Assembly: GCA_965240325.2 (NCBI GenBank)
Contig: OZ251246.1
Span: 248,001 to 312,000 of the forward strand
Direction of reading: 5' to 3'
From: Rebecca billardiae RCC1528
Taxonomy: Eukaryota > Protista > Haptophyta
Length of the DNA stretch: 64,000 nucleotides
The notes under the pieces are model-generated. The model saw only the letters and a program-made list of their open reading frames with translations, was not told where the DNA came from and did no database searches. Position 1 is the first letter of the stretch. Each line of letters begins with the position of its first letter. Shown here piece by piece: positions 34,028 to 52,046 of the stretch. A program made the translations under genes and the position numbers.

Positions 34028-34523
34028 TTATTATAATCTTATAATATTACAGCGTACCTCCATCAATGAATCGGGCAATCGGCTATAGTGGTGATGAACA
34101 GTTGGCGTCTCTCGCCTGAGCTGTGTGCGTCTCTTATATTCTTAGTAAACTACGACTGTGTAGGATACGCTATCCATCGAATGACGACCCGGGTGTGCTA
34201 GGCTCAGGCTGTAGTCGCACTCCGAAGTGGGCCTCGGCACTCGGCAGGCAGTCACTGGCTCAGGCCCTGCGGCGAGCGCTCATGCCATGCCACTACCCGA
34301 CATCTACAGCGGCGAGCCCTCGCTGACTTCGTCCTAGAGGAGGATACTGCACGGTGAGGTCAGACGAGCCCTCTGCGCCGTGCCGCCGTCGGCCGTTCTG
34401 GCGGGAAGCTCGAACAAGCTGCCATTCGATCAGTCTGCTCGGCCGGTCGGTTGCCACGGGTTGCATGCGATGCGATTACGGCCGGGGCCGGCTGTACTGA
34501 ACATCCCGGCGTGCCCGTAGGCC

Positions 34524-46273: not shown

Positions 46274-47713
46274 TCACGACATGTCGCGCGGGTCGAAGAA
46301 GTTGTCTGGCGCGAGCGGGCGCAGCGTCTCGGCCGCGGCCGGGTCGGTCGCTTGGGCGTCGCCCGCATCGTCATCCGCCGCGGTCGACGGCGCGAGCAGC
46401 TTGTGCCAGAACTCGGTGGCCGCGCGCTTCCTCGACGCCCCGCCCGGCAGCGCCGCGGCGTCGGCGGGCGCGGGCGCGCCCGCCGAGTCGGACGGCATGC
46501 GCGCCAGCGCGTCGCTCGCCGCGCCGCTCGGCAGCAGCCGTTCGGCGCCCGTGGCCGCGCGCGCGGCGTCGGCCGGCGCCGAGGGATCATAGCTGGCGAC
46601 CGGGTCGGCGATGTCTGAGTTGGTGAGCAGCATGGTGAAGCCGAGCGCGCGCGCCTCCTCGGCGACGCGCGCGCGCACCGCCGCCATCAGCGGCTGCCAC
46701 GCCGGGCCGGTGCCCACCGCGGCGAACGCGCGCGCGCGGAACGCGTCGCGCGATCGACACCACGCGGCGAACCGCGCGGCGACGACCGTAGACCACGCGC
46801 ACGTGCTCACGAGCGCGGCGGCAGCGAGCATCGCGGCGCCGGAGTCGGAGTCGTACGCGGCGAGGCAGGCGCGCGTGAGCCCGAGCACGAGCGCCGCGCC
46901 CGCGCCCACCAGCGCCGCCGGGCCCGCCACGCGCCACGACTGCGCCGTCAGGAACACGCGCACCGGCCGGAATGATGTGAAGGTAGCGCCGTGCCAGAGC
47001 GAGAGCGCGGCGCGCGAGCCGGCGCCGTCGTCGCAGACGAAGGTGCCGAGGTAGAGCTCGGAGTGGAGGAGGCGTCGGAGGTCCTCGCGGGGCAGCGCCA
47101 GGTCCCGCCCGGCGTACGCCCCGTCGATCACCGCCAGCGCCTCGTCGACCGTCTCGATGCGCCGGACGCCGCCCGCGCGCGACGCGGCCGCCTGCTCGGG
47201 CGCGGACGGTGCCTTCGGGGAGTAGAGGAGCGTGAACTTGAGGCGGCGGGGCGAGGCGGGGCGCCAGCCGAGCCGCGTGTACAGCGCCTTGGCCTTCTTG
47301 TTGTCCGCGTTCACCGAGAGGTACAGGTACTCCACGCCCAACGCCGGCGCCGCGCAACGCCGCTCGACCTCGCGGCTCAGGCCCAGGCCGATCCCGCGCC
47401 GCTGATACGCCTCGGAGACGCGCAGGTCGAAGACGTAGCCCACGGTGCGCAGCGAGCCGTGGACGTAGGCGCGCTTGATCGCGACGGCGACCACCCCGCA
47501 CACCGCGCCGCCGCACGTGTCGTCCACGCACACGAGCACGAGCTTGGCCGGAAACAACGAGGCCTTTGCGTCGAATGCCTGGTGGTGGATAATCGTCATC
47601 TTGACCAGGCCTCGGTAGGCTTGGAACTGGGAGGCGAGCAGCTCGAGCTGCTTGCACGCCTCGTCGTCCGAATCCACATAGTCGCGCACGCGCAGCCCGT
47701 CGCTGAGCGCCAT
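46274..47713 (-). CDS. GNAT N-acetyltransferase, HOOKLESS1-like
   Basis: GYVFDLRVSEAYQRRGIG (motif A), YLYLSVNADNKKAKALYTRLGW (motif B); two hydrophobic segments in the C-half; probable start MALSDGLRV. Confidence 0.8.
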   Translation of the reverse strand: MALSDGLRVRDYVDSDDEACKQLELLASQFQAYRGLVKMTIIHHQAFDAKASLFPAKLVLVCVDDTCGGAVCGVVAVAIKRAYVHGSLRTVGYVFDLRVSEAYQRRGIGLGLSREVERRCAAPALGVEYLYLSVNADNKKAKALYTRLGWRPASPRRLKFTLLYSPKAPSAPEQAAASRAGGVRRIETVDEALAVIDGAYAGRDLALPREDLRRLLHSELYLGTFVCDDGAGSRAALSLWHGATFTSFRPVRVFLTAQSWRVAGPAALVGAGAALVLGLTRACLAAYDSDSGAAMLAAAALVSTCAWSTVVAARFAAWCRSRDAFRARAFAAVGTGPAWQPLMAAVRARVAEEARALGFTMLLTNSDIADPVASYDPSAPADAARAATGAERLLPSGAASDALARMPSDSAGAPAPADAAALPGGASRKRAATEFWHKLLAPSTAADDDAGDAQATDPAAAETLRPLAPDNFFDPRDMS

Positions 47714-47930
47714 CCCGCCGGCGGCCTCGCACGAGCCGCGCGCGGGAGGGGCGGGCTCGCGAAAAGCTCGCCGGCCTGCTGTCGGGCCCGCCGCGGCGGC
47801 CCCGCTCGGGCTGGGCTGAAAGCGCGACGGCCGACCCGGACGGATCAAGTTTCGTGAGTCCTTGCCGCCATCGCGTGGCGCAAGCAAAAAGCACGTGGAC
47901 GGTCGGTCCTGATCGGCGAACGTCGCCGGC

Positions 47931-49040
47931 ATGACGAGCATGCGCGCGCTCGCGCTCGTCGTGCTCGCGCTGGTGGGCGTACCGTGCGCCGTGCGCAGCT
48001 CGAGCGTGCGCCGTGGCCCCGACTACACGCGCGGTGGCCCGCGCCGTGCCGGCAGCAGCCCGCCGCGCACCCGGCGCCCGCCGGCGGGCGCGCGCTCTTT
48101 CGAGTCGGCCGGCGCGGTGCCGACAGATTCCGTGTACGGCGTGAATCCGGTGCTCGCGGCGCTGACGGCGGGGCGGCGCCCGGTGCACACGCTCTACCTC
48201 CAGGACTCGCTCGCGCCCAAGGCGCGCAAGGACGCCGCCGCCCTCGAGCGCATCGTCAGCCTCGCCGAGCGCGCGGGCGCTCGGATCGTCCGCGTCGACA
48301 AGGGCGAATTGAATAATATGGCGCGGAATAAGCCGCACCAGGGGTTGCTGCTCTCGGTGGACGCGCTGCCCGAGCACAGGCTGGCCGAGCTGCCGCCCGT
48401 GCAGCCCACCGAGGCCGGGTACCCCGTCTGGCTCGCGCTTGACGAAGTCCAGGACCCGCAGAATCTGGGCGCGCTGCTGCGCTCCGCCCACTTCCTCGGC
48501 GCGAGCGGCGTGCTCGTGTCCGCGCGCAACTCGGCGCCGCTGTCGGGGGCGACGTCGAAGGCGAGCGCGGGGGCGATGGAGGTGATGCGCGTGCACTCCA
48601 CCACCAATCTCGTCTCCACGCTCGCTCGCTCGCGCGCGAACGGCTGGCGCGTGCTCGGCGCCGCGCTCGGCTCGCCGTCTGAGACAGTCCTGGCGCACGA
48701 AGCCAAACTGCATGGGCCGACGGTCCTCGTGCTCGGGAACGAGGGCTCGGGGCTGCGCACGCTGGTGCGGCGCGAGTGCGACGAGCTCATCGCGATCCCC
48801 GCCGCGCCGCCCGGCAGCGCGGACGCCTTCGGCGCTGAGGACGGCTGGGATGCGGACGACGAAACCGAATCCACCGACGCAGGCGTCGGCGCGCGCGCAG
48901 ACGATGTTGATGGTGACTACGGCGGCGGTGCGCGGGGTGGCTTTGCAGTCGACTCGCTCAACGTGAGCGTCGCCGGCGCCATCCTGCTCCACCAGCTGCT
49001 GCTGCAGCGGCACGCGGCCGCCGGGGCACAGAGTGAGTGA
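47931..49040 (+). CDS. MRM1: SpoU/TrmH-family rRNA 2'-O-methyltransferase (RlmB/MRM1 type), organelle-targeted
   Basis: VYGVNPV, HQGLLL, LDEVQDPQNLGALLRSA, LGNEGSGLR, VDSLNVSVAGAILL; N-terminal targeting-like peptide. Confidence 0.9.
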   Translation: MTSMRALALVVLALVGVPCAVRSSSVRRGPDYTRGGPRRAGSSPPRTRRPPAGARSFESAGAVPTDSVYGVNPVLAALTAGRRPVHTLYLQDSLAPKARKDAAALERIVSLAERAGARIVRVDKGELNNMARNKPHQGLLLSVDALPEHRLAELPPVQPTEAGYPVWLALDEVQDPQNLGALLRSAHFLGASGVLVSARNSAPLSGATSKASAGAMEVMRVHSTTNLVSTLARSRANGWRVLGAALGSPSETVLAHEAKLHGPTVLVLGNEGSGLRTLVRRECDELIAIPAAPPGSADAFGAEDGWDADDETESTDAGVGARADDVDGDYGGGARGGFAVDSLNVSVAGAILLHQLLLQRHAAAGAQSE

Positions 49041-49353
49041 GCTACGTGCAGAATGCGGTGCCAGGGCCTGTAATCTCGCCTGCCTGAGAGCTGTGTCATG
49101 TGTGCGTCTTTTCTTAGTTACAAACTGTAGCATCACTAATCTTCCTTTGCCTTGGTCAGCTGCAGCTGTGTGCGTCTCTTATTATTCTTAGTAAACTGTA
49201 TGGGTACTATTTGGTACTATGGGGGGGGCGCAGGATCAATCCCATCCGGCCATCCCGCGCGCCCTTGGCTGATCCTAGTCATCCCGCCACGACAGAAGTA
49301 ATTAATCAGCGCTCCCAAGCCGTCCGCCCCCGCCGCGGCGCCGATCAACCGAG

Positions 49354-51600
49354 ATGCTAACGAGCGGCACGCGCACTCTGGTGCGCGGCGGACTGGCCGC
49401 CTCGGCGATCGGTCTGGCGCTCCTCGTGTGCACCTTTGTGCGCGAGCACGCCGCCGCGCACGCCGACGCGCAGCCCCTCGCCCTCAGCCGCGCGGCTTTT
49501 GGCGCACACCTGCGCCGCCTGCCCGCGCACGTGCCGCACCACGTGTGCGTGACGGGCTCGCACGCGGAGCAGACGGCGCGCGCGCTGCTGCTCCCCGAGG
49601 ACACCAAGCTGCGCTCGTTCGACATGCCCTCCCGCCTCAACCCGGAGAACGAGTGCACCGCGCTCGAGGCGGCGGTCGGGCACACACTCGTCACGGTTGC
49701 CGAGATTATTGAGGACCGGTGCGCCGCGCGCTGGAAGGTGCACACCTCGACGTGCGACGTGCTGGTGCACGCGGAGGAGGGCGCGGAGTGCGAGCAGCTC
49801 TTCAAGCTCCGCGCCATCGCCGACCAGCCGCACGCGCCGCTCGTCGTGCTCGCCGCCGGCTGGTCGCACGACGCGGGCGCGCCGGCTGACGCGCCGTTGC
49901 TGCACTGCTACAAGGCGCGCGTGCGCCGCGCCGCGCAGCAGAAGCTGGCGCCGCTCGAGGCGGAGGCGATGGCGCCGCACACGGCGCTGCCGCTCCACGG
50001 TGGCGCGCGCACGGGCGTTGCGCTGCACGCGCTCATGCGCGAGCTGCTGGCGCAGACGGCCGGCGCTCGGCCGCACAGCCACGCGCACTGGCTGGCGCGC
50101 TCGGCGGTGCACGCGCAGCGCGACGACGCGCGCGCGCTGCGCTCGCGCCTGCTCGAGGGCGACCCGTCCGTGCGGGTGGTCGACGTGCATGTTGAGATGA
50201 TGAAGGCGTCGCAGGGCCTGCCGCACCGCCTTGCCCACCTCGCGCCGCACGCGCCCGTGCCGGAGGCGGACACGCCGCCCGCCGCCGAGGGGCCTCAGGG
50301 GCAGGGGCAGCCGGCGCGCGCGGCGCAGCGGCAGCCGCAGCAGCGCCGCCGCCGCGCGCAGGAGGAGGAGGAGGAGGAGGAGCAGCCGGCCCTCGTGATC
50401 ACGGCGGACTCCGGCATGATCAGCGCCGGCTTCGCCGGCGACGACGCCCCCCGCACCGTCTTCCCCGCGATCGTCGGCCGCCCGCGGCACAAGGGCGTGC
50501 TGGTGGGCCTTGACCAGAAAGACGTGTACGTGGGCGAGGAGGCGCAGGCGAAGCGGGGCATCCTTACACTCAAGTACCCGATCGAGCACGGGATCGTGAG
50601 CAGCTGGGACGACATGGAGAAGCTCTGGCACCACGCCTTCTACAACGAGCTGCGCGTCGCGCCCGAGGAGTTCGCCGTGCTGCACTCCGAGGCGCCGCTC
50701 AACCCGAAGGCCAACCGCGAGAAGATGACGCAGATCATGTTCGAGACGTTCCACGTGGGCGGGTTCTACGTGTCGGTGGACGCGGTGCTCGCGCTGTACG
50801 CGTCGGGGCGCACGACGGGCATCGTGCTCGAGGCGAACGACGGCGTGATCCACTCCGTCCCCATCTACGAGGGCTACTTCCTGCCGCACGCGGTGCAGCG
50901 GCTCGACATGGGCGACCGCGACCTGACGGAGTACATGATGAAGCTGCTCACTGAGCGCGGCTACAGTTTCACCACGGACGCCGAGCGCGAGGTCGTGCGC
51001 GACATCAAGGAGAAGCTCGCCTTCGTCGTGCAGGACTACGACGACGCACTCGAGTCCTCGCGGCTCTCGCACAACGACCTCGAGACGAGCTACGAGCTAC
51101 CGGACGGACAGGTCATCCAGGTCGCCAGCGAGCGCTTCCGCGCCACCGAGCCGCTTTTCAAGCCGAGCTTCCTCGGGCTGGAGCAGGAGGGCATCCACAC
51201 GCTGGTGTTCCAATCCATCATGAAGTGCGACACCGACATCCGGACGGACATGTTCAGCAACGTCGTGCTGGCGGGCCCCGCGACCAGGTACGACGGGATC
51301 GTCGCTCGCATGGAGAGGGAGTTGCAGCACCTCGCGCCCGACTCGATGAGGATCAAGATAGTGCGCGCGCGCGCGCGCGCGTGCGTTTGCGCGTGTGTAC
51401 TGCACCGCGTGGCCATGCTCACGCCATGTCGTGCGCGCCATCGCGCCGCACCGCAGATCGCGCCGCCCGCGCGCAAGTACTCCACGTGGATCGGCGGCAG
51501 CATCCTCGCCTCGCTCAGCACCTTTCAACACATGTGGATCACGAAGGCCGAGTACGACGAGGCCGGTCCGTCCATCGTCCACCGCAAGACCGGGCAGTAG
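49354..51600 (+). CDS. Actin fusion protein: 336-aa N-terminal extension plus divergent actin (716 aa after removing intron 51361-51456)
   Basis: Full-length actin from 50362 ([50 protein letters not shown]); 96-nt in-frame GT-AG intron; no stop between the upstream domain and actin. Confidence 0.88.
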
Positions 51601-52046
51601 AGTCGTCTTGGCTACTTGAGTAGCGAGTCTCGTCAGCACCGGCAGGCTCGGCTTGCCACGGCCGACGCCTCGAGCCGCGTCACCGTTATTCGTCATGACG
51701 GTAGGCGTTGGGCGGGGGGCTCATACACGCGGCGGGCCCGGGCCGATTAGGCTTATATTAATTATTATATTACTGATCATAAGAACCGGACACGTACTAT
51801 AGACTAGACTATAGTAAGATTCTCAGTATGTAGAGTCGTAGTGTATTAGTGTCAGTAGTAGTACAGTTTACTAATATAAGAATAAGAGACGCACACAGCT
51901 CAGGCAGGCGAGATTCCTGTACTACATCCGCATTGAAGAATGAGGCCGCTGATGCATATATATATATATACTGCTGGAGTGCTGCTCGGTATGTCTGTGT
52001 AAGTGTGATGAGTGTGAGCGCAATAAGGCGCGTAGTCCGCGGCTAT

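What the first reader, a model, noticed from the sequence alone, without database searches (positions are those of the whole stretch)
49354..51600. Secretory-type proprotein carrying a full actin whose ATP site is systematically dismantled
Seen: one frame encodes a hydrophobic N-terminal segment ([17 protein letters not shown]), a Cys-containing domain, a P/Q/A linker, then QQRRRR-AQ immediately before an acidic actin N-terminus ([13 protein letters not shown]). Against conventional actin: P1 loop DNGSGMCKAG -> [10 protein letters not shown] (D11T, G13D, K18S); catalytic Q137 -> D (YVSVDAV); P2 loop DSGDG -> EANDG; G182 -> D (DMGDRD); adenosine loop SGGTTMY -> AGPATRY; C-terminal CF -> TGQ. 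In contrast the D-loop, the H73 region, EAPLNPK...FETF, YEGY, the hydrophobic plug (FLGLE) and [13 protein letters not shown] are retained, with no stops or frameshifts. Changes concentrated on nucleotide contacts imply selection for a nucleotide-independent actin fold rather than decay. Inference: the protein enters the ER and a kexin/furin-like protease cuts at RRRR (similar to the RRLQ/RxL sites of algal secreted proteins), releasing a luminal or extracellular pseudo-actin that could act as a scaffold or decoy. Alternatively it is a membrane-tethered actin that caps or anchors filaments.
Basis: partly seen in the sequence, partly recalled or inferred. Interest (0 to 1): 0.92.

Follow-up and report, generated by a model that had tools for sequence, protein, structure and literature searches.

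The report
Leader-bearing pseudo-Arf–actin fusion, ATP site lost
This alga gene encodes one protein with a secretion-type leader, a dead GTPase-shaped domain and an actin that can no longer hold ATP; it belongs to an undescribed marine-protist family that may place actin outside the cytosol.

Summary
ORF 49354-51600(+) encodes four parts:
- a hydrophobic leader;
- a 250-residue Cys-rich domain;
- a disordered linker ending in RRRR;

One correction: the ORF reads through an in-frame 96-nt GT-AG intron (51361-51456).

The fusion is real. Coding periodicity is continuous, and at least 12 relatives share the architecture. These include an Effrenium voratum (dinoflagellate) transcript and marine metatranscriptome contigs.

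ATP-contact positions are hit preferentially: 11/21 against 28/177 other invariant positions (p=4e-4). Filament and partner surfaces stay actin-like. The loss began in an ancestor shared with a faster-decaying sister copy. Other family members keep intact ATP sites.

A secretory route is favoured but unproven. For it:
- short cleavable-type signal peptides in eight relatives;
- the charge rule;
- two cysteine pairs lost only together;
- a dibasic site at the actin boundary in 12/14 members.

Against it: actin folding needs cytosolic chaperonin, and Arf folds are cytosolic.

No RNA evidence could be obtained for this copy.

The scan already reported this family on another piece of this genome (s1-348440). 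I found no paper describing it.

The parts
49354..49440 (+). Leader: short basic N-flank (residues 1-11, charge +3) and an 18-residue hydrophobic run (residues 12-29). Signal-anchor or signal-peptide type.
   Evidence: The charge difference C-flank minus N-flank is -4, which predicts N-terminus cytosolic and C-terminus exoplasmic.
49486..50241 (+). N-domain (about residues 45-296): Arf-like G-domain fold without GTP motifs. Six conserved Cys (65, 101, 123, 134, 146, 185) and the HHVCVTG strand.
50242..50343 (+). Low-complexity P/Q/A/G linker, predicted disordered.
   Evidence: pLDDT 46-58 for residues 301-334. Length and sequence vary across the family.
50344..50355 (+). RRRR (residues 331-334): conserved dibasic junction and candidate endoprotease site.
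   Evidence: The last two Arg are invariant in alignment A1. A dibasic lies 9-19 residues before actin position 11 in 12/14 members. The junction has pLDDT <50 in the full-length relative model.
50356..51360 (+). Actin domain, exon part 1. It starts A-Q then seven Glu (50362-50382) and covers actin positions about 1-330.
   Evidence: Pfam PF00022 E 4.5e-114. 70% identity to conventional actin.
50401..50424 (+). Degenerate P1 phosphate loop (actin 11-18): T-A-D-S-G-M-I-S in place of D-N-G-S-G-M-C-K.
50779..50781 (+). Q137 replaced by Asp (the residue that positions the catalytic water).
   Evidence: The sister copy P0121 shares this change.
50830..50853 (+). Degenerate P2 phosphate loop (actin 154-161): E-A-N-D-G-V-I-H.
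50914..50916 (+). G182 replaced by Asp.
51271..51291 (+). Degenerate adenine-pocket loop (actin 300-306): A-G-P-A-T-R-Y.
51361..51456 (+). In-frame 96-nt GT-AG intron (phase 0), read through by the ORF. Not part of the protein.
   Evidence: The sister gene on L002 has an intron at the same position.
51457..51600 (+). Actin exon 2 (actin about 331-375) with stop codon. The C-terminus is RKTGQ in place of RKCF.

Best explanation
The gene is one member of an undescribed protein family of marine protists. Family members have four parts in order:
- a hydrophobic leader;
- a cysteine-rich pseudo-GTPase domain with an Arf-like fold;
- a flexible linker ending in a dibasic site;
- an actin.

Shown:
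- The architecture is real, and other organisms make it as one transcript.
- The N-domain has a G-domain fold but no GTP-binding motifs.
- In this copy the actin has lost most residues that hold ATP and Mg. It keeps the surfaces that actins use to contact each other and their binding proteins.

Inferred mechanism:
- The leader inserts the nascent chain into the ER with the N-terminus in the cytosol and the rest in the lumen.
- The N-domain folds there with three disulfides. It acts as a carrier or sorting domain.
- A dibasic-specific protease of the late secretory pathway cuts after R334. This frees a pseudo-actin of about 382 residues that begins A-Q and a run of Glu.
- Unable to bind or hydrolyse ATP, the released protein cannot run a polymerisation cycle. 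It would serve as a static actin-shaped binding module.
- That module could cap or join polymers of ATP-competent paralogues of the same family, or hold actin-binding partners in a lumenal or extracellular space.
For: Fusion:
- GC3 is 0.94-0.96 in one frame across both domains.
- Relatives P0120-P0124, P0127, P0128, P0135, P0139, P0147 and P0150 share the architecture.
- The Effrenium voratum transcript P0150 maps to adjacent exons of a genome contig.

N-domain fold. The GTP-binding motifs (Walker A, NKxD) are absent in alignment A3.

ATP-site loss with retained surfaces.

Secretory route:
- Eight relatives begin with hydrophobic runs of 5-17 residues (9-15 in six) at the extreme N-terminus, each followed within a few residues by small residues spaced as at -3/-1, read by eye.
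- This copy's flanks give a charge difference of -4.
- There are eight conserved Cys positions. Two pairs are lost only together: P159/A205 (17 sequences with both Cys, 7 with neither, 0 with one) and C146/C185 (lost together in three sequences).
- Actin-domain cysteines are depleted: median 2 against 5.
- The N12 glycosylation sequon is gone in 7/12 fusion actins and in 0/15 conventional actins.

Cleavage:
- A dibasic lies 9-19 residues before actin position 11 in 12/14 members. In 7 of them it lies 9-11 residues before, and the native N-terminal length is 10.
- The junction is disordered.
Against: - No RNA, proteomic or localisation data exist for this gene.
- From established knowledge, actin folding depends on the cytosolic chaperonin CCT and prefoldin. 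Arf-family G domains, including membrane-anchored ones such as SR-beta, are cytosolic.
- Near-conventional members (P0120, P0135) and a member with a C-terminal thymosin-beta motif look built for cytosolic partners.
- The cysteine co-losses amount to only 1-2 events per pair on the tree. The tool's sign test cannot reach significance.
- Signal peptides were judged by hand rules, not by a trained predictor.
- The hydrophobic run of this copy (18 residues) fits an uncleaved anchor as well as a signal peptide.
- The sister copy's actin domain is decaying (NG86 dN/dS 0.73 against 0.38 for the N-domain). The actin moiety may therefore be dispensable in this lineage.
Confidence: 0.5

Rival explanations
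1. Cytosolic, membrane-tethered pseudo-actin. The hydrophobic N-terminus anchors the protein in an organelle or plasma membrane with the pseudo-Arf domain and actin facing the cytosol, as in SR-beta or Arl-type anchors. The ATP-free actin moiety binds the end or side of ordinary filaments, or binds actin-binding proteins. It thereby anchors or caps the cytoskeleton at that membrane. The RR motif is then a binding or hinge element, not a cleavage site.
For: - The best structural matches are Arf, Arl and Sar1, and the pre-domain helix aligns to the Arf N-terminal helix.
- Filament and partner surfaces are conserved at the level of real actins.
- Relatives P0122 and P0149 carry a thymosin-beta tail.
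- Actin's need for cytosolic chaperonin (established knowledge).
Against: - Six relatives have hydrophobic runs of only 5-13 residues, too short to span a membrane, and signal-peptidase-type c-regions.
- The C-flanks are not basic, unlike N-out/C-in anchors. The charge rule gives N-in/C-out for this copy.
- An even set of conserved cysteines is lost in pairs.
- Cysteines are depleted in the actin moiety.
Confidence: 0.3
2. A paralogue on its way out. After duplication within an expanded family, the actin moiety lost ATP binding and is drifting. The gene is kept, if at all, for its N-domain.
For: - For the pair formed by this copy and P0121, NG86 dN/dS is 0.73 in actin, 0.75 in the linker and 0.38 in the N-domain.
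- Five contact positions differ between the two copies.
- P0121 has a truncated C-terminus and 73/177 non-contact changes.
- No expression data exist.
Against: - This copy changed only 11 of 177 otherwise invariant non-contact positions on its own, against 56 in the sister copy.
- GC3 of 0.96 and the intact frame and intron signals are kept.
- P0120 shows the same selective pattern, 7/21 against 9/177.
Confidence: 0.12
3. Annotation artefact. Two separate genes or exons happen to lie in one open frame in GC-rich DNA, and actin is not fused.
For: Long chance ORFs are common here. One intron is read through.
Against: Homologous fused transcripts exist in other organisms. Codon periodicity is continuous. 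No Met lies at the start of the actin domain.
Confidence: 0.03

Closest known systems
Conventional actin (Pfam PF00022)
   Same: Full actin fold, 70% identity. The D-loop, W-loop, barbed-end groove and H73 region are kept.
   Different: 11 of 21 nucleotide and Mg contact positions are replaced. The actin is fused behind a 341-residue N-terminal region. The C-terminal Cys-Phe is lost. One cysteine remains, against 3-7 in conventional actins.
Ubiquitin-actin fusions of chlorarachniophytes (Archibald et al. 2003, as reviewed in PMC6332867)
   Same: Actin is synthesised behind an N-terminal carrier domain. A processing site sits exactly at the actin N-terminus.
   Different: The carrier here is a leader plus a pseudo-Arf domain, not ubiquitin. 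The junction is dibasic, not the ubiquitin C-terminus. PMC6332867 reports ubiquitin-actin only in Bigelowiella and its relatives.
Arf/Arl/Sar1 small GTPases and membrane-anchored SR-beta
   Different: No Walker A, no NKxD and no sequence-level similarity. It carries eight conserved cysteine positions instead.
Proprotein-convertase (kexin/furin) substrates, and the RRL motif cut by Golgi aspartyl protease ASP5 in Toxoplasma (PMC4764566)
   Same: A leader, then a domain, then an exposed basic motif directly before the mature part. Many relatives read R-R-L followed by acidic residues.
   Different: This copy reads RRRR-A, with no Leu. No protease, cleavage product or taxonomic link to apicomplexans was shown.
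Laboratory actin-thymosin beta4 fusions, used to keep recombinant actin monomeric (for example 10.1101/833152)
   Same: Relatives P0122 and P0149 naturally carry a thymosin-beta motif directly after the actin C-terminus.
   Different: The window's copy has no such tail. Natural fusions of this kind did not turn up in the paper search.

Membership tests
Actin family (PF00022) | Sequence match to the actin profile over the whole fold | tested here: met
   E 4.5e-114, 381.7 bits against a cut-off of 27.
Conventional ATP-binding actin | Intact P1 loop (D11-K18), Q137, P2 loop (D154-H161) and adenine pocket (G182, G302-Y306) | tested here: not met
   11 of 21 invariant contact positions are replaced, including D11, G13, K18, Q137, D154, G156, G182 and G302.
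Conventional ATP-binding actin | Free-standing protein of about 375 residues with its own start codon | tested here: not met
   No Met lies at the actin start. The domain follows 341 in-frame coding residues.
Conventional ATP-binding actin | Actual nucleotide binding and polymerisation | not testable with these tools
   Needs purified protein.
Arf-family small GTPase | G-domain fold | tested here: met
Arf-family small GTPase | Walker A GxxxxGK[ST] and NKxD guanine motif | tested here: not met
   The family consensus after strand 1 is C-V-T-G-[NS]-[RH]-A. There is no NKxD (alignment A3).
Arf-family small GTPase | Sequence-level homology | tested here: not met
   No Pfam family above noise. The profile finds 0 PDB sequences at E<=10.
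Secretory proprotein with convertase site | N-terminal signal peptide or signal anchor | tested here: inconclusive
   An 18-residue hydrophobic run, an N-flank of +3 and a C-flank of -1. Relatives have short runs with small -3/-1 residues, read by eye. No trained predictor was available.
Secretory proprotein with convertase site | Exposed dibasic or R-x-[KR]-R motif before the mature part | tested here: met
   RRRR at residues 331-334 in a low-confidence stretch. The feature is conserved in 12/14 members.
Secretory proprotein with convertase site | Cleavage and lumenal location | not testable with these tools
   No proteomic or localisation data.
ASP5/plasmepsin V substrates (RRL / RxLxE/Q/D) | R-R-L or R-x-L-x-[EQD] motif | tested here: not met
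   This copy has RRRR-A-Q-E. Several relatives do read R-R-L plus acidic residues.
Leader/pseudo-Arf/dibasic/actin family (undescribed; also scan note s1-348440) | Homologous N-domain followed by a dibasic junction and actin | tested here: met
   N-domain E 1e-112 to P0121 and 1e-41 to P0122. 26 representatives were found, and 12 of 21 scanned carry Actin.

The most novel reading that the evidence does not exclude
Some marine algae and dinoflagellates deliver actins into the secretory pathway. A signal peptide and a disulfide-bonded pseudo-Arf carrier take the actin across the ER membrane, and a basic-site protease then releases it with a native-length acidic N-terminus. ATP-competent and ATP-dead paralogues such as this one would form an actin system in a lumenal or extracellular compartment, folded without the cytosolic chaperonin.
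Probability: 0.4. Interest if true: 0.95.

Novelty: new variant of a known kind. Interest (0 to 1): 0.8.

Why it matters
Actin is treated as a strictly cytosolic and nuclear protein whose folding needs the cytosolic chaperonin. This family places actin behind signal peptides, a disulfide-type domain and a processing site.

If the topology is confirmed, it would reveal an actin system outside the cytosol and a way of folding actin there.

If the topology is cytosolic instead, the family would be a new way of hard-wiring an actin monomer to a membrane through a dead Arf domain.

This particular copy adds a natural experiment. Nucleotide binding has been removed while the interaction surfaces remain. 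That is useful for asking what an ATP-free actin can still do.

The family is abundant enough in ocean metatranscriptomes to matter for the cell biology of plankton.

Tried and rejected
- **RNA evidence.** No RNA run was listed. Three coded runs of unknown kind were listed.
Later searches used only the N-domain (49354-50355), flank motifs, or relatives' sequences.
  - Local tools (run_python, and the repeat finder by reference) did span those places.
- **Whole-protein search.** It was swamped by tandem actins. Only P0120 was informative.
- **N-domain families.** Pfam gave only noise. The PDB profile search gave nothing.
- **Methyltransferase lead.** The protein-atlas features scored 0.72-0.78, below the tool's own trust level. 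I rejected this lead because both fold searches list only GTPases.
- **Profile search for annotated or non-actin relatives.** It found only unnamed marine fragments.
- **Actin tree.** It is unresolved. Holding all fusion actins together costs 19.3 log-likelihood units (AU p=0.031). A single origin of the actin moiety is therefore doubtful. Gene conversion with ordinary actin or long-branch effects could explain this. The Effrenium fusion actin lies outside the conventional actin clade of its own family of dinoflagellates (100/100).
- **Cysteine co-loss.** It is too few events for a test.
- **dN/dS.** Only the NG86 method ran; YN00 failed. Extreme GC3 biases dS.
- **Full-length model of relative P0120.** Both domains are confident, but pTM is 0.53, so there is no reliable docking between them. 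Model coordinates cannot be read, so Cys-Cys distances were not measured.
- **Taxon names.** Only Effrenium voratum is named.
- **Paper searches.** None found a description of this architecture.
Full report
**What is there**

The + strand carries an ATG-to-stop frame of 748 codons at 49354-51600. Long open frames are cheap in this DNA: window GC is 0.51-0.78 and the opposite strand holds a 571-codon ORF. Coding was therefore judged by codon-position composition.

GC at the third position is 0.94 over the N-terminal 334 codons and 0.96 over the actin part, in the same frame. Clear periodicity is seen in every 150-nt bin.

The exception is 51361-51456 (GC3 0.75, no periodicity). It starts GTGCGC, ends CGCAG and is 96 nt long. 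It corresponds exactly to a 32-residue gap in every relative. It is a phase-0 intron that happens to stay in frame. The mature product has 716 residues.

**The actin part**

Pfam Actin matches at E 4.5e-114. Identity to conventional actins reaches 70%.

I aligned the domain with 15 conventional actins taken from earlier hits. Numbering starts from the DNGSG motif.

Of 198 columns invariant in the conventional set, 21 belong to a nucleotide and Mg contact list. I fixed that list beforehand from my knowledge of actin structures: positions 11-18, 137, 154-161, 182, 210, 213, 214, 302-306 and 336. This copy differs at 11 of those 21 and at 28 of the other 177 (odds ratio 5.9, p=0.0004).

Contact surfaces are kept about as well as in true actins:
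- barbed-end groove 20/21;
- W-loop 7/8;
- top of subdomain 4, 14/16;
- D-loop 9/13.

**The fusion is real and belongs to a family**

A word-indexed search restricted to the N-terminal 334 residues found four proteins of 598-705 residues that also carry Actin. The whole-protein search found P0120, which covers 94% of the query.

An exhaustive HMMER scan of 1.84 billion representatives with the N-domain alone found 26 proteins, 25 of them below 1e-10. Of 21 scanned, 12 carry Actin. The rest are short fragments or end in low-complexity tails.

Three lines show that N-domain and actin are made as one message:
- P0120 and P0122 sit on 2.2-kb contigs with short untranslated ends and no intron. These look like transcripts.
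- P0150 is an MMETSP transcript of the dinoflagellate Effrenium voratum.
- P0150 maps onto a 76-kb genome contig as adjacent blocks, separated by an intron of about 90 nt inside the N-domain.

**The N-domain**

AlphaFold2 on a 29-sequence alignment gave pLDDT 83.8 and pTM 0.78, with the core above 90.

At sequence level there is nothing: no Pfam family and no PDB sequence at E<=10 with the profile.

The strand-1 to helix-1 junction reads C-V-T-G-[NS]-[RH]-A. There is no Walker A lysine-serine and no NKxD. So the domain is a pseudo-GTPase.

A methyltransferase hint from language-model features scored 0.72-0.78, below that tool's trust level. The fold searches contradict it.

**Where the protein goes**

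Every N-complete member has a hydrophobic segment before the domain, and these fall into two classes.
- Eight members have runs at the extreme N-terminus, 9-15 residues in six of them. Each run is followed within a few residues by small residues spaced as at -3/-1 of a signal-peptidase site; I read these sites by eye.
- This copy and its nearer relatives have 18-26 residue runs behind a short basic flank. Here the N-flank is +3 and the C-flank -1. By the charge-difference rule this predicts N-terminus in the cytosol and the remainder outside.

The domain has eight conserved cysteine positions.
- Positions equivalent to P159 and A205 of this copy are both Cys in 17 sequences, both absent in 7, and never singly absent.
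- C146 and C185 are replaced together in three related sequences.
- This copy keeps six cysteines.
- On the tree these co-losses are only one or two events each, so the pattern is suggestive and not statistical.

The actin moieties of the family carry fewer cysteines than conventional actins: median 2 against 5, Mann-Whitney p=7.5e-5, rows not independent. The N-G-S sequon at N12 is lost in 7 of 12 fusion actins and in none of 15 conventional actins.

Together these features favour an oxidising, lumenal or extracellular location.

Against this stand two pieces of established knowledge. Actin folding depends on cytosolic CCT and prefoldin. Arf-type domains, including membrane-anchored ones, work in the cytosol.

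I put the lumenal reading at roughly 0.5-0.55 and the cytosolic tether at 0.3.

**The junction**

The two arginines before the actin start are invariant in the six-sequence alignment.

Across 14 members a dibasic pair lies 9-19 residues before actin position 11 in 12 of them. In seven it lies 9-11 residues before, which matches the native N-terminal length of 10. Several read R-x-[KR]-R. Many read R-R-L followed by acidic residues.

The stretch is disordered in the model of this copy, with pLDDT 46-58. In a full-length model of P0120, residues 291-295 at the junction fall below 50 between two confident domains.

A cut there would leave an actin with an acidic N-terminus of normal length. Two known systems offer parallels:
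- Basic motifs before a mature part are cut by kexin/furin-type enzymes (general knowledge).
- In Toxoplasma, the Golgi protease ASP5 cuts at R-R-L (PMC4764566).

This copy lacks the Leu, so only the dibasic reading applies. Cleavage itself is inference.

**How the ATP site was lost**

The N-domain tree pairs this copy with P0121 at 99% support. P0121 is therefore probably a paralogue. That is an inference from length alone.

The two copies compare as follows:
- They share N12A, Q137D and D154E.
- They differ from each other at D11, G13, K18, G156 and G302.

So the site was disabled in their common ancestor and the freed positions then drifted.

Outside the contacts, this copy alone changed 11 of 177 invariant positions. 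P0121 alone changed 56 and has also lost its C-terminal 20 residues.

Pairwise NG86 dN/dS is 0.38 for the N-domain, 0.73 for actin and 0.75 for the linker. That result is dominated by P0121's long branch (1.37 against 0.35).

The state of the ATP site varies across the family:
- P0120 shows the same selective pattern as this copy: 7/21 against 9/177, p=0.0003.
- P0122, P0149 and P0150 have lost Q137.
- P0135, P0123 and P0124 keep almost all contact residues (0, 1 and 1 of 21 changed).

The family therefore began with a working actin, and one branch gave up the nucleotide.

**Origin of the actin moiety**

The actin tree is poorly resolved.
- The Effrenium fusion actin lies outside the well-supported clade of conventional actins from its own family of dinoflagellates.
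- Forcing all fusion actins together is marginally rejected (AU p=0.031).
- Gene conversion with ordinary actin or long-branch effects could both explain this.

**Comparison with what is known**

Carrier-actin fusions are known as ubiquitin-actin in chlorarachniophytes (PMC6332867). Laboratory actin-thymosin fusions are standard reagents. Notably, relatives P0122 and P0149 carry a natural thymosin-beta tail.

Four paper searches found no description of a leader/pseudo-Arf/actin protein.

The scan itself had already flagged the same design on another piece of this genome, and a follow-up agent there reached a similar reading (s1-348440). I reached the fold, family and junction results independently on this copy. 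New here are the ATP-site statistics, the shared-ancestor analysis, the second cysteine pair and the intron.

**Verdict**

The fusion and the family are solid, and loss of nucleotide binding is very likely. The secretory proprotein mechanism is the best single reading but is unproven. A cytosolic membrane tether is the main rival.

Noticed in passing
window 49072-49200 and 51862-51915: The gene is bracketed by an inverted repeat of about 65 nt, with a partial second copy upstream. Its 18-nt core also occurs at 34121(+) and 55418(-): 5 matches against 0.01 expected. It looks like a dispersed MITE-like or regulatory intergenic repeat. It could relate to the spread of paralogues. It is absent from L002.
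   Followed up: partly
L003 22-2139 (P0122) and its relative P0149: Two related family members carry a thymosin-beta motif (Pfam PF01290, E 3.9e-5) directly after the actin C-terminus. This is a natural actin-thymosin fusion, likely to keep its own actin monomeric.
   Followed up: partly
L002 280-2476 (P0121): This is the sister gene, with an intron at the same codon. Its N-domain is conserved (72% identity). Its actin domain is strongly diverged and lacks the last 20 or so residues.
   Followed up: partly
window 47931-49040 (+) and 46274-47941 (-): The upstream neighbours are a SpoU-type RNA 2'-O-methyltransferase with its substrate-binding domain, and a GNAT acetyltransferase on the other strand. 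The two frames overlap by about 10 nt at their starts.
   Followed up: no
L004 10001-12558: In a dinoflagellate genome contig (GC 0.50), prokaryote-style gene calling split the family gene into two ORFs at an intron of about 90 nt. The last 41 residues of the transcript map in a different frame, which points to an indel or assembly difference.
   Followed up: partly
window 51950-51975: A short (AT)n microsatellite and AT-rich islands lie in the otherwise GC-rich intergenic DNA on both sides of the gene.
   Followed up: no
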